Shown here piece after piece: positions 6,036 through 47,600 of a DNA stretch of 64,000 nucleotides. The notes beneath the pieces were generated by a model. The model was not told the origin of the DNA and made no database searches. It worked only from the letters and a program-made list of their open reading frames with translations. This DNA is from Mytilus californianus. Taxonomy: Eukaryota. The stretch's first letter is position 1; every line of letters starts with the position of its first letter. The stretch covers positions 87,358,001 through 87,422,000 of the forward strand of contig NW_026262723.1 in NCBI RefSeq assembly GCF_021869535.1. Direction: 5' to 3'. Made by a program: the position numbers and the translations under genes.

Positions 6036-7520
6036 TCATTCTTTATAGAAATGATAAAACATTATAAAGCATTCAAAATGATAGAAAATTACAAACGGAA
6101 CCCAGAAATGCTTAAATTTCAGCCAAGTGGTACTGTCAAACAGCGGTTGATTAATAAAACCCTCGTACGGAACATACATAAATGTATACGAAAACCAAGT
6201 GCTGAAATTTACAAAACACATCACAAGAAAGATGTTTCGGATTGATAATACAGAATTGGAACTGCTAAACTTTCGGTATTGCTTCATCTGTAGAATAAAA
6301 GTTGTCTGTAAAATCGTGACGGTAACTCTAACAACTGTATTAAGATGGATTCTGATGTCATTACGAAATATCCCGAGACTTTCAAGAATGTAGTAACCAC
6401 AAGTAGCAAGAGATGTTGAAAGGATAATAAAATGTTGAATGTTGATTATTTTCCGTGGCCTTTCCTTTGGTTGTAGTTCTCCAGCTAATGCATGATAACA
6501 TTTGATTGTGAGTGGTATTCGCAAAATGTTTCCGAAAAGATAGTATGCACTGGGTGCACCAGCTTGGTTAAACTTTGTTATGTACATTAAAATGCACTGG
6601 ATCATAATGAAGGATAAAAAAAACAATATAACAAGTCCGACTATACACTTTGATTTCCTATTCATTGGTGTATGCCTGTTAAGAACTGCTATATTTCTCG
6701 ATAAAAGCGGATAATTTTCTCCATTGTCTTGAGAAAGGGAAGTAGAATCAAATAAATGCATGTTGTCAAGTGACACGTACTGCTTTGGCCACATTTGAGA
6801 AATGAATATCAAACTTAACAGACAATATTCAAGCAACACCGGATCCAGAAATGGTTTTAGTATCCTTCCTGCTTTATACAGAGTTGTGGCGTTATTGCAT
6901 AGGTGTCCAGAGTTATTCAAAATGTCTTTTATGTCTTCAAAGTACAAGTCTAAATTGTTACGTGTCCACAAAGAAATGTTTGCAACAAACAAAAACATCA
7001 GTATATAATAAAAACACCTAATATTTGCAAATCTGAATCGTGAAAAATAAACAATGAATATGGTTTGTCCGAGATCGAAAAGCCAAGTAATTATATAGTA
7101 AATTGATTTCTGTGATAATGACTCACGTACATTGCATTGGATATGAAGAGCTAATTTCATCGCCTGTGATACTATATTTCCGAAGCAAAAGAGCCACAGA
7201 AACGCTAATTTCAGTCTGTCAGTAACTTTTCGTCTATGAAAAACCTTCCAATCGCTTTTTATGTGAACTAGAAAGCTACAAGTGATTAAGATACATATGG
7301 CAAAAGCTAGTAATCCAACCATCACCCATCTAGAATCTTTGGTTGGAAATATCAACATCACTTCAAGAACCGCTATAACTAGAGTCGTCAATAGCACTAG
7401 ACCGGATATACTTGCATCATGAACCGAAAATCTGCCATTTTCACGCTTTGTCACTAGTCCTGCTGTAAAAGGCATTACCAATGCAGCATGTATAATCCTT
7501 CGTAGCATATCTAGCATCAT
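6036..7520 (-). CDS. Otopetrin-family (OtopLc-like) 12-TM channel, copy 1; single coding exon, 494 aa
   Basis: Twelve hydrophobic segments with a two-fold internal repeat: QTIFI (TM4)/QTTFI (TM10), ANISLW (TM5)/VNFSTW (TM11), PVLLEYCLL..QMWP (TM6)/PFVIFYHFE (TM12). Uninterrupted ORF. Acceptor ttcttacag lies 7 nt before the ATG. Confidence 0.9.
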   Translation of the reverse strand: MMLDMLRRIIHAALVMPFTAGLVTKRENGRFSVHDASISGLVLLTTLVIAVLEVMLIFPTKDSRWVMVGLLAFAICILITCSFLVHIKSDWKVFHRRKVTDRLKLAFLWLFCFGNIVSQAMKLALHIQCNVRESLSQKSIYYIITWLFDLGQTIFIVYFSRFRFANIRCFYYILMFLFVANISLWTRNNLDLYFEDIKDILNNSGHLCNNATTLYKAGRILKPFLDPVLLEYCLLSLIFISQMWPKQYVSLDNMHLFDSTSLSQDNGENYPLLSRNIAVLNRHTPMNRKSKCIVGLVILFFLSFIMIQCILMYITKFNQAGAPSAYYLFGNILRIPLTIKCYHALAGELQPKERPRKIINIQHFIILSTSLATCGYYILESLGIFRNDIRIHLNTVVRVTVTILQTTFILQMKQYRKFSSSNSVLSIRNIFLVMCFVNFSTWFSYTFMYVPYEGFINQPLFDSTTWLKFKHFWVPFVIFYHFECFIMFYHFYKE

Positions 7521-10500
7521 TGTGTGTCTGTAAGAAATTAATCATTCAATTTACTATTCGCATGTTCACTTAAGTTGCTGTACAAATTTACAATGCATGA
7601 GAATCCGCAGTAGACTGAAATTTCCTCCGCTGGATTTTTAACATATGAAAGCTTTCATTCGGTGAAATGTGATTCTGCTAATCGAAACCGAGAATATTAA
7701 AGGTCTACAGATGAAGGTACACATGCATGTCGCTATGCATATTCTTCCTTTTTTCGGAAAATATAGAATTTAAACAACAACAAAAAGAAGTAAATTATGA
7801 TAGAAAGTATTTGTTTTCTGTAATCATTTCCTTATTTTTCAACACCATATTGTTTTTTTTTTTTTCTCATTTTCTGTTATAACGAAACTGTATTGTTAGT
7901 ATTAAGTGCTGTAGTTTAATTTCGAACTGATAATAGACAACAAATTTCAAAGGAATTATTTCCTCGTCACGTTTCTCATACAGTATACTTAAACTGTGGA
8001 TGTTGTGAGTTGTCCGTTTGTAAACAGCCTCCAAAGTCTTCCAAAGAATCTGGCAGAATATTTTAAACTCAAATGAGCCTTTATTATATCATGTTTATAA
8101 TGTTACCCAGCAATTACGTGGAGGTTTTGTTCCAAAAATCAAAATTTTATTCTCCAAAGTGACATTTTAGAAAACAAAGTACTTTTTTCTAAAGAAAACG
8201 ATTACTTTCTGTTTCAACAAAGAAGCTAAATGAAAGTTAAAATACATTTTGGAAAAATTGTCTTTTTAATGATGAGAATTTGATTAATGGAAATAAGTTA
8301 AGAACTTACAGAAAATTTAAAGTGAAGTACGAACTTGAAAATCATCTTTTAATGAATTTAGATTAAAAATGATATAAAAAAATATCCCAAAATATCCCAA
8401 AATAAGAAGAAACAGCAAGCTATCTATTTAACGTGGTAGATACATTAAAACAGCTTTAGAAAATAGATTGCGTCCCCTATGGAATATAGAGGTGGAAGAG
8501 AAATGCAATTTTTGACATTGTTCCTAGTTTAATTTCAATGACTAATTGAAAAAAAAAAATTTTGTGAGGAATATGATTATTATAATGCCATAAGTAAAAT
8601 GTATAATTACAGAAATAATATTAACATATATTCATGAACTGTGTATTTTACATGTATGGATTTATATGACTATATTTTTCTCTTTCGAATAACCTAATAT
8701 ATAAATGAACATATGATAAAGGTAAGCAGGATTTTTCTTCATTTTTCATAACAGTTCTTAATGTAATAATTGTTATGCTAATTTGAGGAGAGGCATGTTG
8801 TGTAGCAATTAAGAAAAAAAACAAACAAACAAACAAACTTAGATTTTTTTGTCAATGTTTCATATTTGTATTGTTTATTTGTATTTTGTGCTACATGTGT
8901 ATTTTGTAACAATCTCATTGTTTGGATTTAATACTAATAAATTTTTTATATCTTATATACAGTAGATACATCATTTTCATATTGTAAGTGTTCCGATCGA
9001 TTGTTCGAATTCAAATATTTTTGTTGCCTGATTTCGGAAGACGATGAAAATCAATACATATATGTTTTCTAAATTTCTGTGTACTTAATGTGATTGAAAA
9101 TTACATAACACTTTTCTTTGCATTTAAATGCAATTTAAAAAAATAAAAACACTAGGCAAAGTTTTGTCACAAATTAATGTTCAAATTTGAAATATAATAA
9201 ACTTTTATTTCTTTAAATTTAGTATTTACTAATGAGTCTTATGTAGCCCCTTATTGAAGATAACTTAAAACGCGCGCCTGGCGTAACAAATATTAGCCTT
9301 GTACCTTTGATGATTTTTTTTCTAAAATAAAAATAAAAATAAAAAGAAATGTATTACAAAATTTCGTATTGGTTATCATAAAACCTTATTGTACATTTAC
9401 TAGATGCTGTATATTTATATCAAAATCAAACATTCGACCTGAACATGCATGATATATTTGCCACTGGACGTTCAACAACCAACAACCAACAATCAACAAT
9501 CAATAAAACCAAACATTCTGAGGATATTGCATGTGCAACATGATGTCTCCTTTTAGCTATAACGTTAATATTGGATGAGTATACACTTATATGGGACAAG
9601 CATTTAAAAGTTTTTACTACTGTAGTTGGGACTTTTAATATCATGGTAAAATTGACCTCCGATGAATCCGGCTATATTTTATGCCCTTATTCTTCTTCGA
9701 GTGTTTTAGTCTTACACATCCTTGGCTTTTAAATGGTTTGGTTTGAGCGTTCCCGATGAAGGAAGATCCATAAAAGCGCTTCTGACGCACGAAAGTTAAA
9801 GTGTTTTTGGGTCAGACTGTTTTGGGTCAGACTGTTTATCAAAAAATACGGATACTATTTACAACTGCAGACCCAACGGAACCATTAGATCTTAAGGTTT
9901 TATTTCTCTAAAAGCTTACATTCTAAAGCAATTTTCTATATCCAATGACCACAATTCCTGCAAAAATTGCTCAAATCTATCTGTATCTCCTTTAGCTTAC
10001 TATACATCAAATGTTATATCCATTGATTCAGGCATTACAGAAAAAAGTGCGGAGAACTGATATTTTTCAAGGCATTTTTATATGTCAAAGTAAGAAAACT
10101 CTAGCAAATAATCCCTCAACCGGAACGAAACTCAAACTAACTTGATCTGAAACGTACTATGATAGTACATATACTGTACACCATATAGTAAACCATTTGG
10201 TTTAAGAATTGCAGCAAAAGTGAGCGGAAATTGATATTTTCAGGCAATTTTCTATATTTTAGGACCAAAACGTTCAAACAAACGCTAAAATCCTGAAGCT
10301 TAATAATAGTTATGGAAAGCAACCTACAAATGATTTGTAATAGTGAGGCCAACATAACATTATGGTATGAATTGCAAGAGTAATCTCAAAAAAAAATTAA
10401 ATTAAGGAATGCATCTCCCTCTTGAATGGCTTTTATTCCTTGTCCGTGTTCAGCTTTACATGGTCCTTTTTGGTTTTTCAAGTATTTTGGCTTTAGGCAT

Positions 10501-10614
10501 CACCGAAGAGACATTAGTTGTTGAAATGCGTATCTAGTCCAGTAAATTTGGTACCTTTTATGTTATTTCGATTTTAAGATTTTCTTCAATGTAATTTTCC
10601 AATTTGTATTAAGT

Positions 10615-13495: not shown

Positions 13496-15127
13496 ATGAC
13501 ATTCTTTAAAGGAGTAATTCGAGCTGCATTTGTTCTACCGTTTTCGGCAGGTAATGTAGACGAGGGGAATGGTTCACATGATGGCAGCTTGTCTGGACTT
13601 TTACTGATGACCACTTCAATAGCTATCCTTTCTGAGATACTGATGATTGGATTTTCAACTAACGAGACTATTTCAACTAAATTCAGCGTTGGGTTAGCAG
13701 TCTTATCATTTCTATCTGCTCTAGCGATTGCACTTTGCGTGTGTATCAGTTTATACGTGTCATCTAGAGGGAACAGTGTGTTTCATGTTTTACCTTGGAA
13801 TAAATGTAATACAATAAGACTCAGGTTTTTGTGGATTTTTTGTTTCAGCTGTATTATTTCAAGAACATTGGACATGACCTTTTATATCGATTGTCTAACA
13901 AACTCAATGACCCTGAAATTTACAGTAGACACAATAGTGTATGATCTTGTCTGTATAGTATTTTACGTGGTGCAAACTGCATTCATTACATTTTTTTCGC
14001 ATTCGCGATTTACCAGCCACCTTGGTATTTATTATGGATTACTTATTATATTCCTGACAAATATTTCTGTAATATGTCATGCCTTGGCTTCTACTTTTAA
14101 ACCCATGGATAATGAAATTTTAAATTCGTCGACAATAAGCCACCATACTTCGAGTAATACTTCTTGCTTCAAGTCAAGTATGTACGAGGTATTGATGAAG
14201 ATTAATCCTTTCTTGTTACCGGCATTTTGTGAATATTCGCTTGTTTCGATTACATTTATTATGAATATGTGGCCTACATTTGGATTGAAAAGGGAAACGT
14301 TCGTGCTTGATGATATTTCGCTTGACGGAAACAAAGAAACGTCAGAGTCGACGAGCAATTTGAGAGGGTCGACAAATGAGAGGTCAGAATCGACAAATAG
14401 CAGGCGGAATAATGAGCGCATTCCTTTATTAGACAATACTGGAAACACAAGTAACAACCGACAACATCGTATAAGAAGATTTATAAGCATAACTGTTCCT
14501 ATTCTTCTAAATATGCCATCAGTAATATTATATTGTTTACAAATTTCGAAAGTACCATCTGTGCAGTTGGGCAAAACAATATCAATAGCTGTAGTAGCTA
14601 CTATTGAGTTGCTTTTGTATGTGAAATGCTTTTACTCTCTTCAGACTCAATGTAAACCTTTGAAACAAAGGGAATGTACCTCGCTTGATTCTAGTGATTA
14701 CATTTTAATTGCAAGTGTGGTTGCAGCAATTTCATATTCCACGGTAAAACTTATGTCAGATATTTACAATGTCAACTCTGAAACCACATATGCTATAGGT
14801 TTTTATAAACTGGTTATTGATATATTCGCTGCTTATTTCCAAACAGTTTTCATCCTACAAATGAAACAATATTCGAAGGCCTTTAATATATCCTCGTGGA
14901 CGTCTGTGGAATACACTTGTTTATTAATGTCTTTTGTGAATTTATGCTCATGGGCGGCTGATACTTTAATAGTTTCACAATATGTTTACAAAAATGACGC
15001 ACCATATCATTTCTTTGGGTCATCTGATTGGACAGAAATCTTTGGATTTTTATACCCATTTGTGATCTTTTACAGATTCAATGCTTTTGTATCCTTTTAT
15101 GGTTTGTATGACCGATTGAAAAATTAA
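13496..15127 (+). CDS. Otopetrin-family 12-TM channel, copy 2 (most divergent paralog); single coding exon, 543 aa
   Basis: QTAFI/QTVFI, TNIS/VNLCSW, PAFCEYSLVSITFIMNMWP (TM6) and YPFVIFYRFN (TM12, close to the otopetrin FYRFH motif). Acceptor ctatcctcag lies 10 nt before the ATG. Confidence 0.92.
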   Translation: MTFFKGVIRAAFVLPFSAGNVDEGNGSHDGSLSGLLLMTTSIAILSEILMIGFSTNETISTKFSVGLAVLSFLSALAIALCVCISLYVSSRGNSVFHVLPWNKCNTIRLRFLWIFCFSCIISRTLDMTFYIDCLTNSMTLKFTVDTIVYDLVCIVFYVVQTAFITFFSHSRFTSHLGIYYGLLIIFLTNISVICHALASTFKPMDNEILNSSTISHHTSSNTSCFKSSMYEVLMKINPFLLPAFCEYSLVSITFIMNMWPTFGLKRETFVLDDISLDGNKETSESTSNLRGSTNERSESTNSRRNNERIPLLDNTGNTSNNRQHRIRRFISITVPILLNMPSVILYCLQISKVPSVQLGKTISIAVVATIELLLYVKCFYSLQTQCKPLKQRECTSLDSSDYILIASVVAAISYSTVKLMSDIYNVNSETTYAIGFYKLVIDIFAAYFQTVFILQMKQYSKAFNISSWTSVEYTCLLMSFVNLCSWAADTLIVSQYVYKNDAPYHFFGSSDWTEIFGFLYPFVIFYRFNAFVSFYGLYDRLKN

Positions 15128-19130: not shown

Positions 19131-20522
19131 TCATATAAAGGATTTTCAAGGTCGCATATGATATCAGGATTCATTTAAAATTTCATAGTACAAGAAATCT
19201 TTTTAAAATGCAAAGAAACATATAAAGGATATTAGGATTTCCAGCATAAATTTCAAAGGACCAATTACAATAAAAAATAAGATTAGTTTTGCCTGAAGGA
19301 GTTGCAACCTTAGTTTGAGCACTATTACATATAGTTTATTAATTGAAAATTTGAAAATAAATGTGTCATTTAAATCATGCCAATACCGAAGCACCAGCTA
19401 CTAGGCAAATGGTAAGGTAGGGGATTGATATTCCACAAGCAGCGGTTAGTATAAAACGATAAAATGTATAAAAAAAAATAACATGATTTTTTTGGTGCGC
19501 ACAACATATTCACTATGGAATACCTTTCATCAGCCACGTTCGTGTCCACAAGATTGGAGAGACAAAATATTATCATTTTAGGGCATTGTAACCGAAAGGT
19601 CAACTTTAAACAAATAAAGTCGTCTAAGGTATATTTTGCCTCAGAGAGTTGTAACCCAAGTTTAAGCACAATTGTTAATATAAATTGCTTTTTTTCTTGT
19701 GATGGTTTAATGAAATAATTTGCTTTAAAACTGTGTTGAGGGTAAACCATGGTCTACTATCTGCAATTTTATGTTGTACCATACTTTGATAACGAAACAT
19801 GAAACTCAACTAGAATCTAGAGGAAAGTTGGGGGATCTTAACTATAGTAAACCATGTTCATTTTGATGTTTTTCCATGGCTGAAGCTTCACCCCATTTTC
19901 TGAATGCCTGTACCAAGTCAGAAATATGGCAGTTGTTTTTCACTTGTTCACTATGTCACTTGATTGATAGCGTTTGATTTTGTCGGTTTTTTATGGACAT
20001 CCCCTTTTTGAATTTTCCTTGGAGTTCTGTGTTTTTGTTATCCCTTTTTTTCTGAAATATATCCTGCTCTCAACTATTTAGGAAACTGAACAAAGATTAA
20101 CCGAGAGAAAAATCCATTTGTAATATTTTTGTTGTCTTTAATAATTAAGAGTTTGGTAATAATCCTATAAATTGTGTTTTGTCGCCTCTTAAGAATTTAT
20201 ATAAATATGATTTCAAATGAGAACCATTAACCAACCATACAAAAAATAAGGAAAACATATCGTATAGTGGTTTTTAAATGATACATAAATGTAGTTAATA
20301 TTTTCGTTTTCAAATCTATTTTATGCTCATTTAAAAGCCTGTGGATGTAAATTAATAAATCAAACCAAATAACTAAGCCGTTTGTACGAAAAGATAAAAG
20401 GTACAATTCACACACTTTTTCAAATAAAATAAGACTGAAAAATATAAATATTTGTACGATATCTTGAAAATTTACAATAAAACAAAACGTATCGTCATTA
20501 CAATAATGTTGAATATCCTTGT

Positions 20523-20665
20523 CAGAGGCGAATTTAGGGTGGAAGGTGGCCCAAGCCCCCTTTTATGGAGCTGCATATATGGATAATCATATTATTACAT
20601 GTTCCACTCCTAATCTTGTCTAATGTGCCCCCCCCCCCCCCTTTCACACTCTTGGATCCGCATCT
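20523..20665. mobile_element. Short MITE with cagRggcggatcca-type terminal inverted repeats
   Basis: Left end cagaggcgaattta; right end tggatccgcatctg; internal poly-C. Confidence 0.5.
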
Positions 20666-21288
20666 GCTTGTTTCAACTCTTCATATTTGCCAGACCACCA
20701 TTGTAAGTCAAATAAGAGACATACTATAATACTATTCCTAGGCCAAACGCATTCGTTTTTTTTTTATATATGTTAACTCGTAAGAACCATGGTATATACT
20801 TATCCATAATTTTTTGAATTAGAAAATTACAACTTCTTAGGACAGGCACATGAAAATATGCATTAAATAAGTCGTACTGATATGATAAAAAAAAGTTAAT
20901 CTTTTTGCTTTTGTTAAATACAACCGAGAAACAAATCTTGATAGAAACGCAAGATCCACAAAACAATAATTTTCTTACTGTATTTAATTGCAGTAGTTGT
21001 CATATGTCATATTTTAATACTTTTCGTTTTTTGGAGAATTTGATTTCATGCATATTCAGGAAGAAAAACAAATAAAAACAAATAGGAGTCACTTACTATA
21101 GTTCTCGGCTAATTAGTACCTGATTTCCCATTGTTTAGGCTGAATGTATATATAACACAATTGCTAGCTTGGTGTTTGATAAATTGTTATTGTAAAGAAT
21201 TAATGCATCTCAGGGAAGAAAATCAAATTAACAAAAAATAAATGGGTAGCAATACTTCAAGTCATTTTATCTTAATTGCAGCAGAATA

Positions 21289-22794
21289 ATGACGAATCTA
21301 CTATGTAATATTTTGCGTGCTACTTTCATCGTTCCTTTTTCTGCTGGTCTCATTAAGGAGCGAAGAAATGGAGGATTTTCAATACATGACGGCAGTATTG
21401 CTGGAGTAGTTCTTTTGACAACAGCCATGATTATTATCTTTGAAATAATAGTTGTACTGCCAGTGAATCAGTCTCGCTTGTTGATGGTAGGACTTTCAGG
21501 TCTAGCGTTAATCTGTCTAGTGTTGTGTAGCATTGTAGTTCGATGCCGTTCTACCTGGGTCGAAGTTAAGACTGTGAAACCAAGCGATCAAATGAAACTA
21601 AAATTTCTCTGGTTATTTTGTATCGGGAATATCACGTATCAAGCCTTACAACTAGCAACGCATCTTCTATGTAAGATCTACAACCTCCAAGTCACACTGT
21701 TTTGGACGTTCACCTGGACATTTCAGATTTGTCAAACTGCTTTCATTCACTATTTTTCTAGATTTAAATTTGCAAATGTGTTGTGTTTGTATTACGGTTT
21801 ACTGGTTCTCTGTGTGACAAATATTTCAATGTGGACACAGCAAACTTTCTATACGAACAGAATTAGGCTCGAGATAAATATTAGCGACCTCATTAATAAT
21901 ACTATCTCAAACTGTTTATACGGCGATGGACTTGCAACAGCGGTTGGATTTTTGAATCCGTATCTGCAGCCTGTACTACTAGAATATTCTCTTCTAAGTT
22001 TAATCTTCCTTTCCGAAATGTGGCCAAAAAAGAATGCTGAATTTGAGACACTCAACAATTCTCTTTCAAGAAGCAGAGACGATGAAAACCAGACATTACT
22101 GGTAGAAAACGATGACCAAGATGGTGAACATCATCCATTATTGCCACGCTGTAGTGTCTGGCATAAAAATTCAGTATGTGTCCTGGTGATTGGATTTCTT
22201 TATAACTTCTCATTTATGCTAATTCAATGTATTTACATTTATGGACCGAGGGAAAAAATGACAGATTACAGGAAATTTTCCTTCGATGTCTTCTTTTGTG
22301 CTAATATAGTACGAACGCCGCTTATAATCAAATGCTTTTATGCCTTAAATGGACAACTAAGATCAAAACAAGAATCTCATACTGGAATGAGCTTAGATCA
22401 GTTTGTTATAATCACTAGTTCCTTTGCAACTTGTGGATTATATATTGCAGATTGTTTCAGATTGAGTGATTCACCAGCAAGTACCAATCTAGGAGAAATT
22501 CTGTTTAAAATCAATGTCGTCCTCCGAGTTGTTGCTACACTTTTTCAAACATTATTCATTTTGCAAATGAAACACTACAAAAAGATAGGAGACCAAAAGC
22601 CTTTTTGTTCAGTACAAAATACTTTTTTGTTTGTATCCTTGGTAAATCTTGGAATATGGATGTCTTACACTTTTGTTACTCCCAGATATCGTCTGACAAA
22701 ATCTAGCTTTTTATTGGAAAGTTTTTGGTTTCCATTTGTTTTATTTTATCATTTCGAATGTTTTGTCGCATTTTACAAGTTTTTTCGGGCATAA
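21289..22794 (+). CDS. Otopetrin-family 12-TM channel, copy 3; single coding exon, 501 aa
   Basis: QTAFI/QTLFI, TNISMW/VNLGIW, PVLLEYSLLSLIFLSEMWP and PFVLFYHFE. Acceptor ttaattgcag(cag) lies 7 (or 4) nt before the ATG. Confidence 0.92.
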   Translation: MTNLLCNILRATFIVPFSAGLIKERRNGGFSIHDGSIAGVVLLTTAMIIIFEIIVVLPVNQSRLLMVGLSGLALICLVLCSIVVRCRSTWVEVKTVKPSDQMKLKFLWLFCIGNITYQALQLATHLLCKIYNLQVTLFWTFTWTFQICQTAFIHYFSRFKFANVLCLYYGLLVLCVTNISMWTQQTFYTNRIRLEINISDLINNTISNCLYGDGLATAVGFLNPYLQPVLLEYSLLSLIFLSEMWPKKNAEFETLNNSLSRSRDDENQTLLVENDDQDGEHHPLLPRCSVWHKNSVCVLVIGFLYNFSFMLIQCIYIYGPREKMTDYRKFSFDVFFCANIVRTPLIIKCFYALNGQLRSKQESHTGMSLDQFVIITSSFATCGLYIADCFRLSDSPASTNLGEILFKINVVLRVVATLFQTLFILQMKHYKKIGDQKPFCSVQNTFLFVSLVNLGIWMSYTFVTPRYRLTKSSFLLESFWFPFVLFYHFECFVAFYKFFRA

Positions 22795-22810
22795 TTTTAT
22801 TATATATGTA

Positions 22811-25800
22811 ACTCTCAGAAACTTGTCCATCCCCTCAAACGTGTCCAATTCCCCAAAAAGTGTTCATATGACGTCACTGAACTGCAAAAACATATCTAGT
22901 TGCTAAAGGGCGCCAAACGTGTCCTTTTAATGAACGCCCAATCGTGACCTTTTTATATAAAAAAAAGTGTTCAATCCCCTCAAACGTCTCTTTTATGTGA
23001 ACGCTCAATTGTGTCCATATTAAAAAAACGCCCAAACGTGTCCTTCTTATTGAATTGATTGTAAATTTGATGTCGTTCTAAACATGCATGAAATACTTGC
23101 CATTTGACGTTAAGCATCCCAGCATCAATCAATCCTTTGCCGTAGATATGCATGAAATATTCTTTTTAAATTCTAAGCAAGCAGCAATCAGTTAATCCAT
23201 TTTTTTGTAATACATGTTTTGCTAACGATTATAAATTATTAGGCTGGTATCAGGGGTGCTTATAATACATGCAAAGTTATTTCTCTTGTTTTGTCTCTTA
23301 AGGTCAAATTACAGTAAATGGGCTATGTCACAGAGTTTCCTAAAATTTTGCATACAACTTTAGCTCGTTGAACTTTATCTGAAAATCGAAAAAATCAATG
23401 CCATTATCTTTTATTTTCTGAAATATTACTGATTGAATTCTTTCAAAATATGTGAACATTTGTATAGGAAGCACATAAAATCGGCGAAAAACGCTCATAA
23501 ATTTGTCTTAAAATCATAAAATCTCTAATTTCAAATACATAGATTTTTCCATAAAAAAACGATATGTTGTTGGTACAAAAATTTCCGGTTTAAAGATGTA
23601 AGCTATTGATAGGGTCACCGACTTCGTTTTAACGGTATACATCATTCAAAGTGGTGTGCTAGGTGAAAAAATGCCACAAAACGTCGAAAAAATGTAATGT
23701 CATCTCGTTGTAGGACTACCTTACAATGTTAACGTTTTGACGTTTTTCGCCACCAACAGGTTAAAGACCAAACAGCCTATTGTTGATGCACATCAACTAA
23801 CGCAACTTGGTAGTGACATAAAAGCTCTATGACGTTGTTTCTAGCCATGGAAAAAACGTCAAATTATAACGTCCTATTTCGCGTTTATCACGGATTCCAA
23901 CATTGTGAAACTACATCTTCCAAGAAAAGTGGTATTAATCGTCGCACTGATACCTAGTGGAAATTAAACACAAATGGACACAAAAGATACTACACTATCT
24001 GTAACCTCCGTTCTAATAAAAATAATGATAAAAATATGAATTTTGAACTCGACTTTTTGCATTTGCGCCGATCTGCATTTCACTTTTTTTCTTTCACTTG
24101 CGCCGATTTTGTCTTTCATTTGCGCCGATAGTGTACAGGTAAATATAGGTAAAAGTTATTTTTTATCTATCATATAAACCTCTTCCGTTAGCCAGTTGTA
24201 CATCTGTTATGAATTGTCAGTTATAACATGAATATAACTGTTGTCCCCTACTCACAAAGGGAGGTGGGAGTAGAATTTCGAACAGGATAAGTCAAATTAA
24301 AAGATATTTGTGCACTCTGTTTTCATCCACTAAAATCACGGAGTAAAATTCTATTTACAGCATTTCAAAGCACCACAATTAAATCTATAAAAATGTAATA
24401 CTAGTACAATGATTTATTATCTTGCCAAGAATTTATATGCCACACATCTGATATATTCCTTTCTTGTCATTTTATCTTTTCTATACTTGTTGTACTTGCC
24501 AATAACGAAGTCCATCTTTTCTTTCTCGTGTCAAAACGAAGTTCTCGAACAATATGACCAAAATTATCTTAAACATAAGGGAACACTATTTATATCCATA
24601 TATTACCATGCAATATACATTCTAGGTTTACTACATGTACATGTATTTACTCGTATAGCAAATAAAGTATCGGGGCTAGTGATAAAAAAAATAAAATAGG
24701 CGCTAATGAAAGAATCAAATCGGCGCAAATTAAAGATCGAAATTTTTTTTAAATCGGCGCAAATCTCGTACGCCCGTGTAACTTTACACTGGTAAATTTA
24801 TATGACTTACGCTTAGAATTTTAACTTAATATGTGTTTTTCAAAACTGAGTTTTCAGAAGGTTAGGCCGATAACAATACTTTCTAGAAGTTTCGATATAC
24901 TGGCAACGTATGCATGTTGAGATTAACTTATTTCTTTAAGATTCTCGTAAAATAATGGTGATCTTGCAATGAAGTTAAATTTTATCTATACTGTTTAATT
25001 GACAAAATCTTAATGTAAAAATAAAAATGATAAAGGTTCATTGTCTTTTGTCGTTTGTTTCATTTCAAATTGTCTCAAGGAGAAATGATAAAGATTTCGC
25101 CTGATTTCACAGAAGCTTAAGGCAAAAAATATAAGAAATTGATATACTCAGTGAATGTGAATTAAAATAAAAAAATTACGGTTTTTAAAACTAAACTTGT
25201 TGTAAATTTAACTTATAACAAAAACAATAGTTATCAAAGGTACCAGGAATTGCTTCAAGAATAAGATCCAACATAAAATTTCTCACTTTCAAAAACCTAC
25301 AATGACCGGAAAGATTGAAAACAAATTTCGATTTTCAATGCCGGCAATCTATACATACAACCTTGTCTTTGTTTTAATTTCCAAATGAGCTATTTAGATT
25401 CCTAATATTTCATCCTGTTCTGAGAAATACTTTATAGTTTTCAACGGAAAATTATTTCTTAGATTCTAAATCAATTTTTGAATTTAAAACTTATTTGTAT
25501 TTTATATTTACTGTCTCGTTTATTCAAAACACGTGAGGTAGTAATAACGGGGATCGTATTTTATGATAGGTTAAATGGATGTAAAACGTTTTAGAATCAA
25601 AAACTTTAATTCATATATTATACCAATACACCTATAATTTTAATTTTAATTTTCTTATATTCTAAATATTCAGAAATAATGAATCCACAAACTAGATGGA
25701 ATAATTTGTATACGCTCGTCTTAGTCGGGACACATAATGGTATAAAGAAGTCCGTCCGTGATAATGGATTTCCGTCTGTCAACTGTAGCGAAAGAGTGCG

Positions 25801-27017: not shown

Positions 27018-27033
27018 CCCAGGAATGATTATT

Positions 27034-34402: not shown

Positions 34403-35899
34403 ATGAATCAACTGTGCAAAATTTTGCGTGCTACATTCATCGTTCCGTTTTCTGCTGGTCTGATAAAGGAGCGACGAAATGTAGGATTTTCAGTACATGA
34501 CGGCAGTATTGCTGGAGTAGTTCTATTGACCACAGCCATGATCATCATATTTGAAACAATAGTTGTACTACCAGTGAATCAGTCTCGATTGCTGATGATA
34601 GGACTTGCAGGTCTGGCGTTAATCGGTCTAGTGATGTGCAGTGTTGCAGCTCGATGCCGTTCTAACTGGGTAGAAATAAAAATTGTAAAACCTAGCGATC
34701 AATTGAAACTAAAATTTCTGTGGTTGTTTTGTATCGGGAATATTATATATCAAGCATTGCAACTAGCGATGCACCTCGTCTGCAAGGTTTACAACTTCCA
34801 AGTCACACTATTTTGGGCGTTCACCTGGACATTTCAGATATGTCAAACTGTTTTCATTCACTATTTTTCTAGATTTGAATTTGCAAATGTTTTGTGTTTG
34901 TATTACGGTTTATTGGTTTTATTTGTGACAAATATTTCAATGTGGTCACAGCAAACTTTCTATACATACAGAATTAATCATGATATAAATATCAGCTATC
35001 TCATTAATAGCACAGTCTCAAACTGTTTATACGTTGATGGACTCTCTAAGGCAGTAGGATTTTTAAATCCGTATCTGCAACCGGTATTACTAGAATACTC
35101 TCTTCTAAGTTTGATATTTCTTTCCGAAATGTGGCCAAAAAAGAAGGTTGAATTTGAGACACTCAACATTTCCCTTTCAACAGACATAGACGATGAAAAT
35201 CAAACATTACTGGTACAAAATGATGACCTGGATAGTGAACAACACCCACTACTGCCGCGCTGTAGTGTCTGGCATAAAAATTCAGTACGTGTCCTAGTAA
35301 TTGGTTTACTATACAATTTCTCATTTATGCTAATTCAGTGTATTTACATATATGGACCGAGGGAAAAAATGACAGATTACAGATCATTTTCCAACATTGT
35401 CTTCTTTTGTGCTAATTTAGTACGAACGCCGCTAATAATCAAGTGTTTCTATGCATTGAACGGACAACTAAGACCAAAACAGGAAACTAATAGTGGGATG
35501 AGCTTAGATCAGTTTGTTATTATAACAAGTTCTTTCGCAACTTGTGGATATTATATTTTAGATTGTTTCGGTGATGCATATCCAAATTCAAAACCATTAG
35601 AAGTTCTGTTTCGAATTAATGCTGTCCTCCGTGTTTTTGCTACACTTTTTCAAACATTATTTATTTTGCAAATGAAACACTACAAAAAGATAGGAGACCA
35701 AAAGCCTTTTTGTTCAGTACAAAATACTTTTTTGTTTGTATCCTTGGTAAATCTTGGAATATGGATGTCTTACACTTTTGTTAATCCCAGATATCGTGTG
35801 AGACAATCTAATTTTTTATTGGAAAGTTTTTGGTTTCCATTTGTAATATTCTATCATTTCGAATGTTTTGTCGCATTTTACAAGTTCTTTCGAGCATAA
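34403..35899 (+). CDS. Otopetrin-family 12-TM channel, copy 4 (close paralog of copy 3); single coding exon, 498 aa
   Basis: Same motifs as copy 3. Start placed at ATG 34403 (MNQLCK), which aligns with the copy 3 start and follows acceptor attttacag by 8 nt. AATAAA at 35904. Confidence 0.92.
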   Translation: MNQLCKILRATFIVPFSAGLIKERRNVGFSVHDGSIAGVVLLTTAMIIIFETIVVLPVNQSRLLMIGLAGLALIGLVMCSVAARCRSNWVEIKIVKPSDQLKLKFLWLFCIGNIIYQALQLAMHLVCKVYNFQVTLFWAFTWTFQICQTVFIHYFSRFEFANVLCLYYGLLVLFVTNISMWSQQTFYTYRINHDINISYLINSTVSNCLYVDGLSKAVGFLNPYLQPVLLEYSLLSLIFLSEMWPKKKVEFETLNISLSTDIDDENQTLLVQNDDLDSEQHPLLPRCSVWHKNSVRVLVIGLLYNFSFMLIQCIYIYGPREKMTDYRSFSNIVFFCANLVRTPLIIKCFYALNGQLRPKQETNSGMSLDQFVIITSSFATCGYYILDCFGDAYPNSKPLEVLFRINAVLRVFATLFQTLFILQMKHYKKIGDQKPFCSVQNTFLFVSLVNLGIWMSYTFVNPRYRVRQSNFLLESFWFPFVIFYHFECFVAFYKFFRA

Positions 35900-42976: not shown

Positions 42977-43546
42977 TAAACTTTACCTTTAATATATTTA
43001 CAACATACTCAATAAGGATATTTCTAGCATTTTATTTGATCATATATCCAAGTTTGGATCTAACTCCAAGTAAGGTAGCTAAGTCTCATCCGTTAACCCT
43101 TTTCTCAACTGATTTAGTTTTATTTTTAATATCTCTGATCTTTACCTTTACAATCGATAGAGACTTCCTCGCAATATGTATGTTTTACATTGCTTCTCTT
43201 ATATTTCAAAGGTCACGTCAGCGACCGGGGATATATTTGAGATGCCGTGTAATCAATCTGCATTTAGGTATTAAATAACCATTTGATCTTTTCTCTGGTA
43301 TTAAACTTTTTCTAACAGAAAAGCTATTTGTTTTGTTTTATAAAAAAATAAGAAGATAAGATAAGAATAGTGTCCGTATCAAAAATTCACATTATGTGAA
43401 GAAAAGCAGACGTTTTCTTTATCAAAAAGGAAGTATGTTTTGTAATGTCTACATGAAATGATTTTTAAAACGGACATATTTTCTAGCAAATTATGATTAT
43501 ATTTAAAGAATGTGTATTTATAATCTATCATTATTACTTTTCACTA

Positions 43547-44100
43547 CAACTATACGTCACCGTACGGCCTTCAAAAATTACCGAAACCCACACCGCATAG
43601 TCAGCTATAAAAGGCCCCGAAATAAAAAATGTAAAACAATTCAAACGAGAAAACTAATAACCTGATATATGTAAAAACAATGAACGAAATCAAATATGAT
43701 ATACAGCAAAAAACAACAACCATTGAATTACAGGCTCTTGACTTGGGACAGGCACATACAGAATGTGGCGAGGTTGAACATGTGAGCGGGCGCCCCCTAA
43801 CCTGGGACAGTGGCGTAACAGTAAAATATATGAAGAAACTATAAAATCAGTTGAAAAGGGCTTAACTTATCAGATCGATACAAAGCAGAAAAAACAAGTT
43901 ACAAAAACGCAGACCGGACGTGGCAGGGAGTTTATACATCCCTACAACAAGAAAGACAATACGTACAGATCTGAGAGAACTCGCAGCTACTGACAGCTAG
44001 TTCAAAGCCAATAACAACTAATAAAAAAATCATGTATCTAAGACTGAAGTATCAATCAGCACACATCCAACATCCAATTCATTTAGTGTAAAGACGTCAT
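43547..44100 (+). repeat. Dispersed repeat family A, long copy (5'-truncated)
   Basis: Colinear with 1858-2414. Confidence 0.85.
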
Positions 44101-46118
44101 TACAAAATGTCACATCCGGTGTCACCTGATAGGTAACTTCACACTTATTCTAAAGATTATATGGTTTCTTTTATATGAAATTAGTACAAAATTGAATTCT
44201 TCTGAGAAACACCAGGGCACTTCCGGTTATATTATGTCGTCCTATATTGCAAAAGACTTCATGGCTTATAGTGTACCAGTATGACGTTATAGCAAATATC
44301 AAAATCAAATGGCCTTTGATCTTGACTTCAATGTGAAGGACAAATGTTAAGGAACTCTAATCAAAAGCCTCCAAGTCTTATAAGTATGATTAAGAAGATA
44401 TCCTATACTAAACAGCTTAATTTGAATATTTAAGGGGAGAAAAATCATATAAAAAGTCACTAGAGCACTTCGACCCAAATCTATTGGTGTAACGTCAAGA
44501 CGAATGAACTGTTCAATATCATACACCAAATATGTAATCGACATGTTGCGAATCAAAAGCAACATTTTAGAAGCAAAAGTTGCGGAAGAAAAAAAATAAT
44601 AATCAGAACAAATTCAACAGGTCTTTGCACGGAAAAGTAAAAATAAAATAAACAATTCTACTCAATTCAATCATGGGTTTATACATCTATGATTCAATAA
44701 ACGACAGTTTTGTACATTGCACGTATTTTTTGAAAAGTCGTCGTGAGTTAAAATATTAAAAACTTCCTGTTTCGATTAATTTACAAGGAAACAATACAGA
44801 TAATGATGACTGAAGATCAAACTAAAAACGAAAATTCCCGTGAATCACAATAAAACAGGCAAAGAATACTAATCGCGCAGTGTATATCTCTACAGGTCTA
44901 ATAATAAAGAGTATACAGAACTAGGTTGAATTGAATCGACACGAAAGGTAGGAACTTAATGTATCATATTATCTGGATGAGTTACATAGTACGAGGAATA
45001 AATTAGAATTGTATTTCCTGTTTATTGTGATGATAAATGTTTAATGTATGGTATATCGTCTAAGAGTCTAGACATGGAAAGTATAATTAGAATAGGAAGA
45101 GGAGATTAATTTTCGGGTTCAATCCACTAACACGTAGTAACAGTTACCACAGTGTTATTTTACGATGACATAGTTTTGCTCATCACAAAAATTCTTTTAT
45201 TGTCAATTGAGTTTATCTGAAGTAACAATTTCAAAAATGTTTAGTTCTCAGAAATCTTTATGTCAATTCCCCGTTTCAAAATCTATTGCTTTCCGGTATA
45301 TATTTAAAAGCATACACCAAAACATTGTGTTGGTTATCAACATTCTTAAATAATGTAAAAAGTTAAAATTGCGTCACGTTATTTTATTTGCATTTTTGGT
45401 ATACAAACAAAACAACTCACCAAAGATACCAGGCTTATAATGTTGTACGCCTGATGCGTGTTTCGTCGACAATAGACTAATCAGTGACGCTCGAATGAAA
45501 AAAACTTGAAAGCAAAATAAAGTACGAAGTTGAAGAGCATTCAGAACCAAAATTTCGGAAAGGTTTTACCAAATACAGCTCTGTTAGTACTTGCAAACAT
45601 ACTCTGTTCCTGGAGTAGAAAATCCTTAGTATTAGTATTTCGATCAATGTTTTGTAATCTGTGAATAAACTCCTATAAATTTTGAAATTGTGAATTTGGA
45701 CAACACATCTGTTGTCACATTTCTGTTTCCAAATTCAAATTCTATCAAACTATTTCGGCAACCTGTCACTTCCATATACAAAAATATAGGCGTAAAACAC
45801 ATATTTTTATAATTTTTCTGCATTCGATGCATGTTTATGAATGAAAGAAACGAGAAGAATAACTAATATCATTTGAAGCGTTTCTTGTATGATTATTACA
45901 TTTTGCTTACTAAGACCAGTTTAGTATTATGAACAAATACAAGATGATTGATATCAGATCATTAAAACATTTAGTATTGCTGTCCTATAAATTAAGTACT
46001 GTGACTATCTATTTCAGGAAAGGAAAAATGGTTGAAATATTGACACCGTTTAATGGTCACCTCAATAACTAAATATCCGTTTTACATGATCAACTTCCAT
46101 CTTACAGCGAGATTTAAA

Positions 46119-47600
46119 ATGAGACAAAAATTGAAGAAAATCCTGCATGCTGCATTTGTTATGCCATGGACAACTGGTTTGATTAAAGAATATCGTAACG
46201 GTGACTTTTCCATTCATGACGGCAGCATTGCTGGAGTAGTTATTTTGACAACAATTATTATCATGATATTTGAACTCATGTGTTTCTTTCCTAAAACTAC
46301 TTCCCGGATAGTAATGACTGTTTTGTTGATCATTGCAGTTTTCACCTTGATTTCCCTAAGCCTTTCAGCTTGCAGGAATAAACACTGGACAGTGCCAAGA
46401 AGTTCAAAAGGCAGTCACAGTTTGAAATTGAAATTCCTTTGGCTATTTTGTGTAGCAAATATTACTTTCGAAATAGTGAAATTTGCAATTTATAGCAAAT
46501 GTGACCAACTTCCAGATGTTCTACTTTATTACATTTCAACTTGGATATTTCAAATTTTGCAAACATTCTTCCTTCATTACTTTTCCAAATTCATATTTAA
46601 TAATATATTGTGTCTTTATTATGGATTTCTTGTTCTTGTTGTCACAAACTTTTCACTGTGGACACATCGAACTATATTTACATATTATGAAGCCAAATCA
46701 TTTTTAAACATCAGTGACATAAGTGGAAATGTATGTAATGATACAAAATCGTTTGTTCCGATGAAACAATTTAAACCATTTTTAGATCCAGTGTCTTTAG
46801 AATACTGTCTGTTATGTGTGATACTCCTATCCGAGATGTGGCCGAGAGCAAAATATCCCGAACTTCAAAGTCGACAACTACAAGAGTCCTCTTCGAGGCA
46901 AGACACAGAAGAACATCAGTGGTTATTACGTTGCAATAGCAATGTTCCGACTAGAACAGTTTGGAATAGAAAATCCATTATAGTTTTAATTATTGGTATC
47001 TTGTATATGATTGTATTTATTGTTATTCAGACATTGTTTCTTAACATTGATCAACTGAGAAATAATTACTTGCACGTAGCTTTCGTATTTTATGTTTGTG
47101 GAAATTTCATTCGGATACCACTTACAATAAAGTGTTTTTACGCATTTTCTGCACAACTCCGTCCTAAATCAAATGCTCAAACGGTCACAGACATGAAACA
47201 TGTAATTATTTTAGTTAGTTCAATGGCTACCTGTGGATATATAATAGCAGAATGTGTAGAGAATCTTCGCTACGGTGAAGTAAAAATCATACTTAATGCC
47301 ATTTTCCGTGTGCTAAGCACTGTTATGCAAACTTCATTTATTTTACAAATGAAACAGTACAAACGAGTAGACAGGACAAACACTATTATGTCTGTACAGA
47401 ATACATTTTTATTCATGTGTTGCATAAACTTCAGTTTTTGGTTTTCATATACCTTTATATCACCACAGTATACTGTCAGATTGCAAAGACACTTTTTTGA
47501 AATTGCCAGCTGGCTAAAAATTAAACATTTCTGGTTCCCTTTTATTATATTTTACCACTTCGAGTGTTTTATCTCATTTTATGACTTCTTTAGAAAATAA
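46119..47600 (+). CDS. Otopetrin-family 12-TM channel, copy 5; single coding exon, 493 aa
   Basis: QTFFL/QTSFI, TNFSLW/INFSFW, PVSLEYCLL..SEMWP and PFIIFYHFE. Start placed at ATG 46119 (MRQKLKK) by paralog alignment, 11 nt after acceptor catcttacag. AATAAA at 47666. Confidence 0.92.
   Translation: MRQKLKKILHAAFVMPWTTGLIKEYRNGDFSIHDGSIAGVVILTTIIIMIFELMCFFPKTTSRIVMTVLLIIAVFTLISLSLSACRNKHWTVPRSSKGSHSLKLKFLWLFCVANITFEIVKFAIYSKCDQLPDVLLYYISTWIFQILQTFFLHYFSKFIFNNILCLYYGFLVLVVTNFSLWTHRTIFTYYEAKSFLNISDISGNVCNDTKSFVPMKQFKPFLDPVSLEYCLLCVILLSEMWPRAKYPELQSRQLQESSSRQDTEEHQWLLRCNSNVPTRTVWNRKSIIVLIIGILYMIVFIVIQTLFLNIDQLRNNYLHVAFVFYVCGNFIRIPLTIKCFYAFSAQLRPKSNAQTVTDMKHVIILVSSMATCGYIIAECVENLRYGEVKIILNAIFRVLSTVMQTSFILQMKQYKRVDRTNTIMSVQNTFLFMCCINFSFWFSYTFISPQYTVRLQRHFFEIASWLKIKHFWFPFIIFYHFECFISFYDFFRK

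What the first reader, a model, noticed from the sequence alone, without database searches (positions are those of the whole stretch)
6702..46928. Every paralog keeps an acidic dileucine [DE]xxxLL motif in the otherwise unalignable TM6-TM7 loop
Seen: ENYPLL (6702-6719, minus), ERIPLL (14414-14431), ENQTLL and EHHPLL (22084-22101, 22126-22143), ENQTLL and EQHPLL (35195-35212, 35237-35254), and EHQWLL (46911-46928). The loops differ in length and sequence, yet all five keep the motif. Known: [DE]xxxL[LI] binds AP-1/2/3 adaptors and directs endo-lysosomal or basolateral sorting, and this loop is cytosolic in otopetrin topology. The luminal loops also carry N-glycosylation sequons. Inference: an otopetrin subfamily acting in endosomes, lysosomes or mineralising vesicles rather than only at the cell surface.
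Basis: partly seen in the sequence, partly recalled or inferred. Interest (0 to 1): 0.78.

Follow-up and report, generated by a model that had tools for sequence, protein, structure and literature searches.

The report
Conserved sorting motif in mussel otopetrins
Five neighbouring mussel genes for otopetrin-type channel proteins all keep a short Glu-x-x-Pro-Leu-Leu signal in their flexible cytosolic middle loop. The same signal runs through a large bivalve-expanded branch of the family far more often than chance allows, which suggests these channels are sorted by clathrin adaptors, possibly to internal vesicles.

Summary
Observation confirmed and extended. The window (Mytilus californianus) holds five single-exon otopetrin-like genes. 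All seven stated hexapeptides are there and lie in the disordered TM6-TM7 linker of a 12-helix otopetrin fold.

- **Mytilus family:** 22 of 23 proteins keep [DE]xxxL[LI] at the same aligned place, while the rest of the loop is unalignable.
- **Distant representatives (50%-identity clusters):** 55 of 116 carry it in this loop against 6.0 expected from loop shuffles. The stricter E-x-x-P-L-[LI] occurs 30 times against 0.19 expected.
- **Specificity:** only the canonical spacing is enriched, and Glu is preferred over Asp 55 to 5.
- **Distribution:** named carriers are mussels, oysters, ark clams and scallops. OtopLc-type proteins and the solved OTOP1, OTOP2 and CeOTOP8 lack it.

The consensus equals the ExxPLL form that binds AP-1 and AP-3 in melanosomal cargo (PMC3418312).

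An adaptor-binding sorting signal is the best reading, but whether the destination is lysosome, calcifying vesicle or recycling plasma membrane cannot be decided here. No paper searched describes it.

Caveat: the TM12 proton-acceptor His is Glu or Asn in these genes. This scan has noted this array before, and His-less otopetrin-like genes elsewhere in the genome.

The parts
6036..7520 (-). Paralogue 1: single-exon otopetrin-like gene, 494 aa
   Evidence: ORF. 100% identical to P0007 on a 117.87 Mb contig that also carries genes named Mytilus californianus in NCBI. AF2 model with 12 helices, pTM 0.71. The top 12 Foldseek hits are all OTOP structures.
6660..6794 (-). Paralogue 1 TM6-TM7 cytosolic linker (residues 243-287)
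   Evidence: Disordered, pLDDT about 30. Lies between the conserved TM6 'EYCLLSLIFISQMWPK' and TM7.
6702..6719 (-). ENYPLL motif (E268-L273)
   Evidence: L273 is invariant and L272 is at least 90% conserved in the family alignment.
13496..15127 (+). Paralogue 2: most divergent copy, 543 aa
   Evidence: Pfam PF03189 Otopetrin, 79 bits, E 4.4e-22. Its orthologue P0021 is in M. coruscus.
14273..14473 (+). Paralogue 2 TM6-TM7 linker (67 aa)
   Evidence: Loop extraction from the alignment.
14414..14431 (+). ERIPLL motif
   Evidence: The orthologue has ELSPLL at the same place.
21289..22794 (+). Paralogue 3: 501 aa, transcribed without splicing
   Evidence: ORF, identical to P0014. Stranded RNA reads cover about 21170-23674 and none cover the upstream 20168-21169. 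A 2369-nt contig is colinear with 21439-23764, and no splice joints were found.
22024..22170 (+). Paralogue 3 TM6-TM7 linker (49 aa)
22084..22101 (+). ENQTLL motif (first of two)
22126..22143 (+). EHHPLL motif (second of two)
34403..35899 (+). Paralogue 4: 498 aa from the ATG at 34403 (the listed ORF starts at an upstream TTG, 34316)
   Evidence: Pfam PF03189, 52.5 bits. Identical to P0015, 498 aa.
35135..35281 (+). Paralogue 4 TM6-TM7 linker (49 aa)
35195..35212 (+). ENQTLL motif (first of two)
35237..35254 (+). EQHPLL motif (second of two)
46122..47600 (+). Paralogue 5: about 492 aa from the Met that matches homologue P0001 (the ORF opens at 46053)
   Evidence: Pfam PF03189, 66.5 bits. 93% identical to P0001, 493 aa.
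46842..46973 (+). Paralogue 5 TM6-TM7 linker (44 aa)
46911..46928 (+). EHQWLL motif
   Evidence: Identical in P0001.

Best explanation
The E-x-x-[P/T/W]-L-L strings are one conserved short linear motif: an acidic dileucine sorting signal of the [DE]xxxL[LI] class, in its restricted ExxPLL form. It is displayed on the flexible cytosolic linker that joins the N- and C-barrels (TM6-TM7) of a bivalve-expanded clade of otopetrin-like channels.

The likely mechanism is that the signal is read by the sigma/large-subunit hemicomplexes of the clathrin adaptors AP-1, AP-2 or AP-3. The channels would then be packed into coated vesicles at the plasma membrane, trans-Golgi network or endosomes, and a substantial pool would cycle through or reside in endo-lysosomal or lysosome-related vesicles rather than staying at the surface.

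Shown here: the motif, its position in the otopetrin fold, its disorder, its selective conservation and its residue preferences.

Inferred: cytosolic exposure (from homology with solved OTOPs, charge bias and outer-loop sequons), adaptor binding, and the destination compartment.
For: - **Presence:** all strings are at the stated places.
- **Fold and position:** the top 12 Foldseek PDB hits are all OTOP1/2/3/CeOtop8, with TM-score by target up to 0.78. The profile aligns TM6 'P-x-x-x-E-Y' and TM12 with mOTOP2 and OTOP1. The motif lies in a 45-residue linker with pLDDT about 30, between helices 6 and 7.
- **Orientation:** the tm6-7 linker is intracellular in OTOP1 (PMC10556057). Short inner loops have K+R 0.22 against 0.10 in outer loops, and 23 of 23 members have sequons flanking a Cys in the outer TM5-6 region.
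- **Conservation within the family:** 22 of 23 Mytilus members, across about 10 paralogue lineages at 37-53% identity, keep it at one aligned column. LL is the only invariant or near-invariant feature within the loop.
- **Conservation among distant relatives:** 55 of 116 representatives against 6.0 expected (z = 21). ExxPL[LI] occurs 30 times against 0.19 expected.
- **Controls:** motif density is 0.97 per 100 aa in the loop against 0.16 elsewhere. The reversed motif is found in 10 proteins and spacings 0-2 in 6-12 proteins, against 55 at spacing 3. Of the 85 L[LI] pairs in the loops, 55 have E at -4 and 5 have D, although E and D are similarly common in the loops (8.8% and 7.3%).
- **Independence:** the motif-bearing loops fall into about 58 groups whose flanks are under 40% identical. 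Carriers are spread over nearly all deep branches of the clade.
- **Flexible placement:** the distance to TM6 is 15-88 aa and to TM7 10-72 aa. This fits a linear motif and not a fixed structural element.
- **Match to the known signal:** in OCA2, tyrosinase and TYRP1 the restricted consensus is ExxPLL. E-to-D ablates AP-3 binding, and the -1 Pro is needed for AP-1 (PMC3418312). LIMP-II ERAPLI binds the AP-1 and AP-3 hemicomplexes (PMC2173715).
- **Precedent:** sea urchin Otop2l is found in the plasma membrane and in endocytic calcifying vesicles, and it governs their pH (PMC13000164).
- **Expression:** paralogue 3 is transcribed in the sense direction.
Against: - There is no experimental localisation, adaptor-binding or mutational data for any member.
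- About half of the distant representatives lack the strict motif. Many of these have near-misses such as EYTPLF, EDTPLV, EETPLM and DEMVPIL; 71 of 116 fit a relaxed pattern, which was not tested against shuffles.
- Residues at -2 and -3 also matter for adaptor binding: EKGPLL is inactive in OCA2 (PMC3418312). A consensus match therefore does not guarantee activity.
- T/S at -2 followed by Pro could mean the conserved unit is a proline-directed phospho-site with another reader.
- The shuffle test ignores relatedness, although the flanks are not alignable.
- Orientation is inferred and not measured.
- The model's mean pLDDT is only 67.7.
Confidence: 0.6

Rival explanations
1. The conserved unit is a different kind of linear motif. 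It could be a proline-directed phosphorylation or docking site (E-[T/S]-[T/S]-P-L-L), or a binding site for a regulatory partner that tunes channel gating through the intracellular linker. In that case it is not an adaptor-read sorting signal.
For: The -2 position is T or S in 38 of 55 distant motifs and is followed by Pro in 30, giving an [ST]-P site. The TM6-7 linker is known to affect gating in OTOP1, where R292 is needed for the NH4Cl response (PMC10556057).
Against: The invariant part is LL, with Glu exactly four residues upstream. Only that spacing is enriched, and the LL pair, the fixed -4 spacing and Glu over Asp are not required by an [ST]-P site. Three of the seven motifs in the window (ENYPLL, ERIPLL, EHQWLL) have neither Ser nor Thr among the three residues between Glu and LL, and none of the seven has S/T directly before Pro. 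Known functional ExxPLL sorting signals quoted in PMC3418312 show the same core.
Confidence: 0.2
2. The motif does bind adaptors, but it serves only rapid AP-2 endocytosis and recycling, or AP-1B basolateral delivery, of a channel whose working site is the plasma membrane. On this reading there is no organellar subfamily.
For: According to established cell-biology knowledge (not checked in a paper here), the [DE]xxxL[LI] class is used by many surface proteins for internalisation and polarised sorting. The tyrosinase EKQPLL motif bound the AP-2 hemicomplex as well as AP-1 and AP-3 (PMC3418312). For sea urchin Otop2l the authors propose passive incorporation from the plasma membrane during seawater endocytosis (PMC13000164).
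Against: The strong Glu-over-Asp and -1 Pro preferences match the requirements reported for AP-3 and AP-1, which serve lysosome-related organelle delivery (PMC3418312). This evidence is suggestive only.
Confidence: 0.15
3. The motif is a chance or compositional by-product of acidic, Leu-containing loops inherited from a recent common ancestor, without function.
For: The five window genes are paralogues, so sharing a string could be descent. Loops are rich in D/E (16%) and contain L/I (11%).
Against: - 55 observed against 6.0 expected in distant representatives, and 30 against 0.19 for ExxPL[LI].
- The reversed motif and other spacings are not enriched.
- The flanks have diverged beyond alignment while E and LL stay.
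- Carriers span tree paths of more than one substitution per site.
Confidence: 0.03

Closest known systems
Melanosomal and lysosomal acidic dileucine signals: OCA2 LL1, tyrosinase EKQPLL, TYRP1 ANQPLL, LIMP-II ERAPLI
   Same: Same core E-x-x-P-L-[LI]. Glu is preferred at -4 and Pro at -1, the signal sits in a cytosolic unstructured segment of a membrane protein, and acidic residues lie upstream (PMC3418312, PMC2173715, PMC2199968).
   Different: Those signals lie in N- or C-terminal tails, and their binding to AP-1, AP-2 or AP-3 has been shown experimentally. Here the motif is in an internal inter-domain loop of a 12-TM channel-like protein, and binding is untested.
Sea urchin Otop2l, an otopetrin proton channel of calcifying primary mesenchyme cells
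   Same: It is an otopetrin-family protein of a marine calcifier that is found in intracellular endocytic or calcifying vesicles as well as the plasma membrane, and it controls vesicular pH (PMC13000164).
   Different: Its vesicular pool is proposed to arise by bulk seawater endocytosis, and no sorting motif was reported. I could not obtain its sequence to check for the motif. The mussel genes belong to a separate bivalve expansion.
Vertebrate OTOP1/2/3, C. elegans OTOP8 and OtopLc-type proteins (canonical otopetrins)
   Same: 12-TM double-barrel fold. The TM6 Pro-x-x-x-Glu is kept, and the TM6-TM7 linker is intracellular (PMC11343839, PMC10556057).
   Different: The canonical linkers are short and basic, or carry an 'HHFSVDC'-type motif, and have no [DE]xxxL[LI]. 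They keep the TM12 proton-acceptor His, which is Glu or Asn in the window genes.

Membership tests
Otopetrin (Pfam PF03189) | Significant match to the family profile | tested here: met
   Paralogues 2, 4 and 5 score 79, 52.5 and 66.5 bits against a cut-off of 27.8. Paralogues 1 and 3 gave no single-sequence Pfam hit but belong to the same alignment. The family profile hits OTOP2 (E 1e-06) and OTOP1 (E 0.0032) in the PDB.
Otopetrin (Pfam PF03189) | 12 transmembrane helices in two homologous barrels (otopetrin fold) | tested here: met
   AF2 model with 12 long helices, pTM 0.71. The top 12 Foldseek hits are all OTOP1/2/3/CeOtop8, probability 1.00, TM-score by target 0.58-0.78.
Otopetrin (Pfam PF03189) | Conserved TM6 Pro and proton-carrying Glu (mOTOP2 P246/E250) | tested here: met
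   P227 and E231 are invariant in the family and align with mOTOP2 'YPFNIEY'. The role of these residues is described in PMC11343839.
Otopetrin (Pfam PF03189) | Conserved TM12 proton-acceptor His (mOTOP2 H551, CeOTOP8 H567) | tested here: not met
   The position aligned with H551 is Glu in paralogues 1, 3, 4 and 5 ('FYHFEC') and Asn in paralogue 2 ('FYRFNA'). They are therefore filed as otopetrin-like by fold and not as proven proton channels.
Otopetrin (Pfam PF03189) | Proton-selective conductance | not testable with these tools
   Needs electrophysiology.
Acidic dileucine [DE]xxxL[LI] sorting signal | Sequence consensus with an acidic residue at -4 and L-[LI] | tested here: met
   All five paralogues carry it, seven motifs in total. 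Four of the five contain at least one ExxPLL; paralogue 5 has Trp at -1.
Acidic dileucine [DE]xxxL[LI] sorting signal | Located in a cytosolic, accessible (unstructured) segment clear of the membrane | tested here: met
   The linker has pLDDT about 30. In the distant representatives the motif lies a median 27 aa from TM6 and 19 aa from TM7; in the five window genes about 21-48 aa after the TM6 Trp. The cytosolic side is inferred from OTOP topology (PMC10556057), charge bias and outer-loop sequons. It was not measured.
Acidic dileucine [DE]xxxL[LI] sorting signal | Conserved beyond chance in homologues | tested here: met
   55 of 116 against 6.0 expected, ExxPL[LI] 30 against 0.19 expected, and enrichment specific to the canonical spacing.
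Acidic dileucine [DE]xxxL[LI] sorting signal | Direct binding to AP-1, AP-2 or AP-3 hemicomplexes | not testable with these tools
   Needs yeast three-hybrid, pull-down or complex modelling.
Acidic dileucine [DE]xxxL[LI] sorting signal | LL>AA changes localisation or endocytosis | not testable with these tools
   Needs cell biology.

The most novel reading that the evidence does not exclude
A large bivalve-specific expansion of otopetrin-like proteins are dedicated organellar ion channels. They would be delivered by AP-3 or AP-1 through a conserved ExxPLL signal to lysosome-related or calcium-carbonate-forming vesicles of mantle, haemocyte or larval shell-field cells. There they would set vesicular pH for intracellular mineral precursor formation, some of them using a rewired conduction path without the canonical TM12 histidine.
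Probability: 0.2. Interest if true: 0.8.

Novelty: new variant of a known kind. Interest (0 to 1): 0.58.

Why it matters
Otopetrins are treated as plasma-membrane proton channels. Only in 2026 was one, sea urchin Otop2l, shown to act also on calcifying vesicles (PMC13000164), and no sorting mechanism was given.

A selectively conserved ExxPLL signal in a whole bivalve-expanded clade gives a concrete, mutable handle (LL>AA, E>D, P>A). With it one can ask whether otopetrin-type channels are actively sorted to internal compartments in shell-building animals. That question bears on how calcifiers control vesicular carbonate chemistry and on their sensitivity to ocean acidification.

An LL>AA mutant may also retain these uncharacterised channels at the cell surface, where they could be recorded by patch clamp. 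That matters because many of them lack the canonical proton-acceptor histidine.

Tried and rejected
- **Word-based protein searches.** A single-sequence search and a profile search returned only Mytilus family members. The exhaustive representative search was therefore used once, because the homologue test could not be done otherwise.
- **Pfam on single sequences.** It missed paralogues 1 and 3. Profile and fold evidence were used instead.
- **Hydropathy threshold.** A plain threshold gave ragged TM calls, so the AF2 helices were used.
- **AF2 helix 5.** It runs far into the outer region, so the first loop tally under-counted outer sequons. The tally was redone on the outer TM5-6 region.
- **Loop clustering.** Single linkage at 30% identity lumped nearly all loops, because low-complexity sequence aligns by chance. 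The 40% threshold was reported instead.
- **Coupling with loss of the TM12 His.** Rejected. His-keeping bivalve members also carry the motif.
- **Literature.** Searches for otopetrin with dileucine or di-leucine, with Mytilus, and with Crassostrea found nothing on this motif or on the bivalve expansion. A broader bivalve search returned no listed paper that mentions otopetrin.
- **Tissue of expression.** It could not be read, because run and sample names were coded.
- **Sea urchin Otop2l and vertebrate OTOP3.** Their full linkers could not be retrieved for a motif check.
- **Unused calls.** The third word-based search and the second structure job were not needed.
Full report
**What is in the window.** They lie in five uninterrupted ORFs of about 490-545 aa: 6036-7520 on the minus strand, and 13496-15127, 21289-22794, 34316/34403-35899 and 46053/46122-47600 on the plus strand. 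The sequence is AT-rich at about 32% G+C.

The five proteins align along their whole length at 31-46% identity to the first. Three are identical to proteins found on a 117.87 Mb contig that carries other genes named Mytilus californianus in NCBI. The window is therefore a stretch of a mussel chromosome with a tandem array of paralogues.

**What the proteins are.**
- Pfam's Otopetrin model (PF03189) matches paralogues 2, 4 and 5 above its cut-off.
- A profile of the family hits mouse OTOP2 and zebrafish OTOP1 among solved structures, aligning TM3-TM6 and TM11-TM12.
- An AlphaFold model of paralogue 1 (pTM 0.71, mean pLDDT 67.7) has twelve long helices.
- Its top 12 Foldseek matches in the PDB are all otopetrins (chicken Otop3, mouse OTOP2, zebrafish OTOP1, CeOtop8, Xenopus OTOP3), with TM-score by target up to 0.78. 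Nothing else comes close.
- The TM6 Pro-x-x-x-Glu that carries the proton in mOTOP2 (PMC11343839) is invariant in the family.
- The TM12 proton-acceptor His (mOTOP2 H551) is not kept. It aligns with Glu in paralogues 1, 3, 4 and 5 and with Asn in paralogue 2.

I therefore call them otopetrin-like by fold and leave their conductance open.

**Where the motif sits.** In the model the motif (E268-L273 of paralogue 1) lies in the 45-residue linker between helix 6 (213-242) and helix 7 (288-313). This is the longest disordered stretch of the model, with pLDDT about 30.

It is the TM6-TM7 linker that joins the two barrels, and that linker is intracellular in OTOP1 (PMC10556057). Two local features agree with this orientation:
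- The short loops predicted to be inside carry K+R at 0.22 per residue, against 0.10 for the outer loops.
- The outer TM5-TM6 region has one to three positionally conserved N-x-[ST] sequons around a conserved Cys in all 23 family members.

Orientation is thus well supported but inferred.

**Is it more than chance?** Within the Mytilus family I aligned 23 proteins covering about ten paralogue lineages at 37-53% identity. Of these, 22 keep [DE]xxxL[LI] at one aligned place, and the two leucines are the only invariant or near-invariant positions within the loop. Shuffling each loop gives the motif with probability 0.02-0.26.

The word-based searches reached no further than Mytilus, so I ran the exhaustive profile search once. 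It found 708 relatives at E <= 0.001 and returned the best 150 representatives of 50%-identity clusters. After aligning them to the family HMM, 116 distant representatives cover both TM6 and TM7.
- 55 of them carry [DE]xxxL[LI] in the linker, against 6.0 expected from loop shuffles (z = 21).
- 30 carry E-x-x-P-L-[LI], against 0.19 expected.

The controls all point the same way:
- Motif density is 0.97 per 100 aa in the linker against 0.16 in the rest of the proteins.
- The reversed pattern occurs in 10 proteins.
- Spacings 0-2 between the acid and L[LI] occur in 6-12 proteins and spacings 4-7 in 16-25, against 55 for the canonical spacing of three.
- Of the 85 L[LI] dipeptides in the linkers, 55 have Glu four residues upstream and only 5 have Asp. 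Glu and Asp are similarly frequent in the loops (8.8% and 7.3%).

The motif-bearing loops fall into about 58 groups whose flanks, with the motif masked, are under 40% identical. On a tree of the TM core the carriers are scattered over nearly every deep branch of the clade, with 24 state changes, which fits an old signal lost many times. Many 'non-carriers' have near-misses such as EYTPLF, EDTPLV, EETPLM and DEMVPIL. The distance of the motif from TM6 (15-88 aa) and from TM7 (10-72 aa) varies freely. This is what a linear motif in a flexible tether does, and what a fixed structural element does not.

**Who has it.** All motif-bearing representatives that carry a name are pteriomorphian bivalves: Mytilus spp., Ostrea edulis, Crassostrea virginica, Tegillarca granosa, Argopecten irradians and Ylistrum balloti. 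Many others are unnamed transcript assemblies.

The following lack it:
- The most distant hits, which carry an 'HHFSVDC'-type motif after TM6 and are OtopLc-type proteins of flies, a beetle and Aplysia.
- A nemertean and a hemichordate relative near the base of the clade, which lack the strict motif.
- The solved CeOTOP8, zebrafish OTOP1 and mouse OTOP2, which have short basic linkers without it.

**What it most likely does.** The derived consensus E-[T/R/E]-[T/S]-P-L-[L/I] is the restricted ExxPLL form of the acidic dileucine signal. In OCA2, tyrosinase and TYRP1 this form directs cargo to melanosomes. There, changing Glu to Asp abolishes AP-3 binding, and the -1 Pro (or perhaps a large hydrophobic residue) is needed for AP-1 binding (PMC3418312). 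LIMP-II's ERAPLI binds the AP-1 gamma-sigma1 and AP-3 delta-sigma3 hemicomplexes (PMC2173715).

The mussel clade's preference for Glu over Asp and for Pro at -1 mirrors those requirements. Paralogue 5 has Trp at -1. I therefore favour an adaptor-read sorting signal, with confidence about 0.6.

The compartment cannot be decided here. The same class of signal also serves AP-2 endocytosis and polarised delivery of surface proteins. Sea urchin Otop2l, which sits both in the plasma membrane and in endocytic calcifying vesicles and controls their pH (PMC13000164), shows that a vesicular role for an otopetrin in a calcifier is realistic. Its authors, however, propose passive uptake and not a signal.

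A rival reading is that the conserved unit is an [ST]-P phospho-site or another docking motif on a linker already known to affect gating (PMC10556057). That reading does not explain the invariant LL, the exact -4 Glu, or the three window motifs with no Ser or Thr between Glu and LL.

**Expression.** Stranded RNA reads of one run cover paralogue 3 in the sense direction from about 21170 to 23674, with none in the 1 kb upstream. A 2369-nt assembled contig is colinear with 21439-23764, and no splice joints were found. The gene is therefore transcribed as an unspliced mRNA with a 3' UTR of roughly 0.9 kb. Depth was low, 1-5 in about 6% of the run. Many homologues come from about 2 kb assembled contigs, a length compatible with transcripts. 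Tissue could not be read because sample names were coded.

**Novelty.** The full-text searches for otopetrin with dileucine or di-leucine, Mytilus, or Crassostrea found no description of the motif or of the bivalve expansion. A broader bivalve search listed no paper that mentions otopetrin.

Earlier notes of this scan describe the same five-gene array and, 30 Mb away, otopetrin-like genes with Lys at the TM12 His position. I checked that position here and found Glu or Asn. The loss of His is not coupled to the motif, because some motif-bearing bivalve members keep 'FYRFH'.

**Verdict.** The motif is a selectively maintained linear signal of a large bivalve-expanded otopetrin-like clade. I class it as a new variant of a known kind, with interest 0.58.

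Noticed in passing
window 6036-7520(-), 13496-15127, 21289-22794, 34403-35899, 46122-47600 (TM12, last ~20 codons of each): The TM12 proton-acceptor histidine of otopetrins (mOTOP2 H551 in 'FYRMH') aligns with Glu in paralogues 1, 3, 4 and 5 ('FYHFEC') and with Asn in paralogue 2 ('FYRFNA'). The TM6 Pro-x-x-x-Glu is kept. Across the homologues the position is E, H, K, Q, T, S or N. OtopLc-type proteins and some motif-bearing oyster and ark-clam members keep His.
   Followed up: partly
window 21170-23764: Paralogue 3 is transcribed on the sense strand as an unspliced mRNA covering the CDS plus about 0.9 kb of 3' UTR. No splice joints were seen. All five coding regions are single exons, which is unusual for animal otopetrin genes and may point to a retrogene origin followed by tandem duplication.
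   Followed up: partly
window 19834-20167: A short stretch has very high depth in all four RNA or contig runs (up to about 1000), with many loose read ends on both sides. It looks like part of an abundant multicopy element and not part of the gene.
   Followed up: no
window 22084-22143 and 35195-35254; P0068 (Argopecten irradians): Paralogues 3 and 4 carry two motifs 14 residues apart (ENQTLL and E[HQ]HPLL). A scallop homologue has an exact 17-residue tandem duplication that carries EWTPLL twice. The motif seems to be duplicated repeatedly within the linker.
   Followed up: no
P0019 (Mytilus coruscus gene model): This 'unnamed protein product' is a chimeric model. Its N-terminus contains a TM6-end and linker fragment with ENQTLL from one paralogue, fused to the start of the next, and its C-terminal third is unrelated sequence. 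It is probably a mis-annotation across tandem copies.
   Followed up: no
distant homologues P0025-P0166, TM6-TM7 linkers: The -2 position of the motif is Thr or Ser in 38 of 55 cases and is followed by Pro in 30. This gives an [ST]-P site inside the signal, so phosphorylation might regulate sorting.
   Followed up: no
window: outer TM5-TM6 region of each paralogue (about residues 186-222 of paralogue 1): One to three positionally conserved N-x-[ST] sequons (two in most members) flank a conserved Cys in all 23 Mytilus family members. This suggests a glycosylated, possibly disulphide-bonded outer loop.
   Followed up: partly
window 14077-14574 (-) and 48272-48742 (+): The first is a 165-aa ORF antisense within paralogue 2. 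The second is a 156-aa TTG-start ORF downstream of paralogue 5 with no Pfam match. Both are probably chance ORFs in AT-rich DNA.
   Followed up: partly
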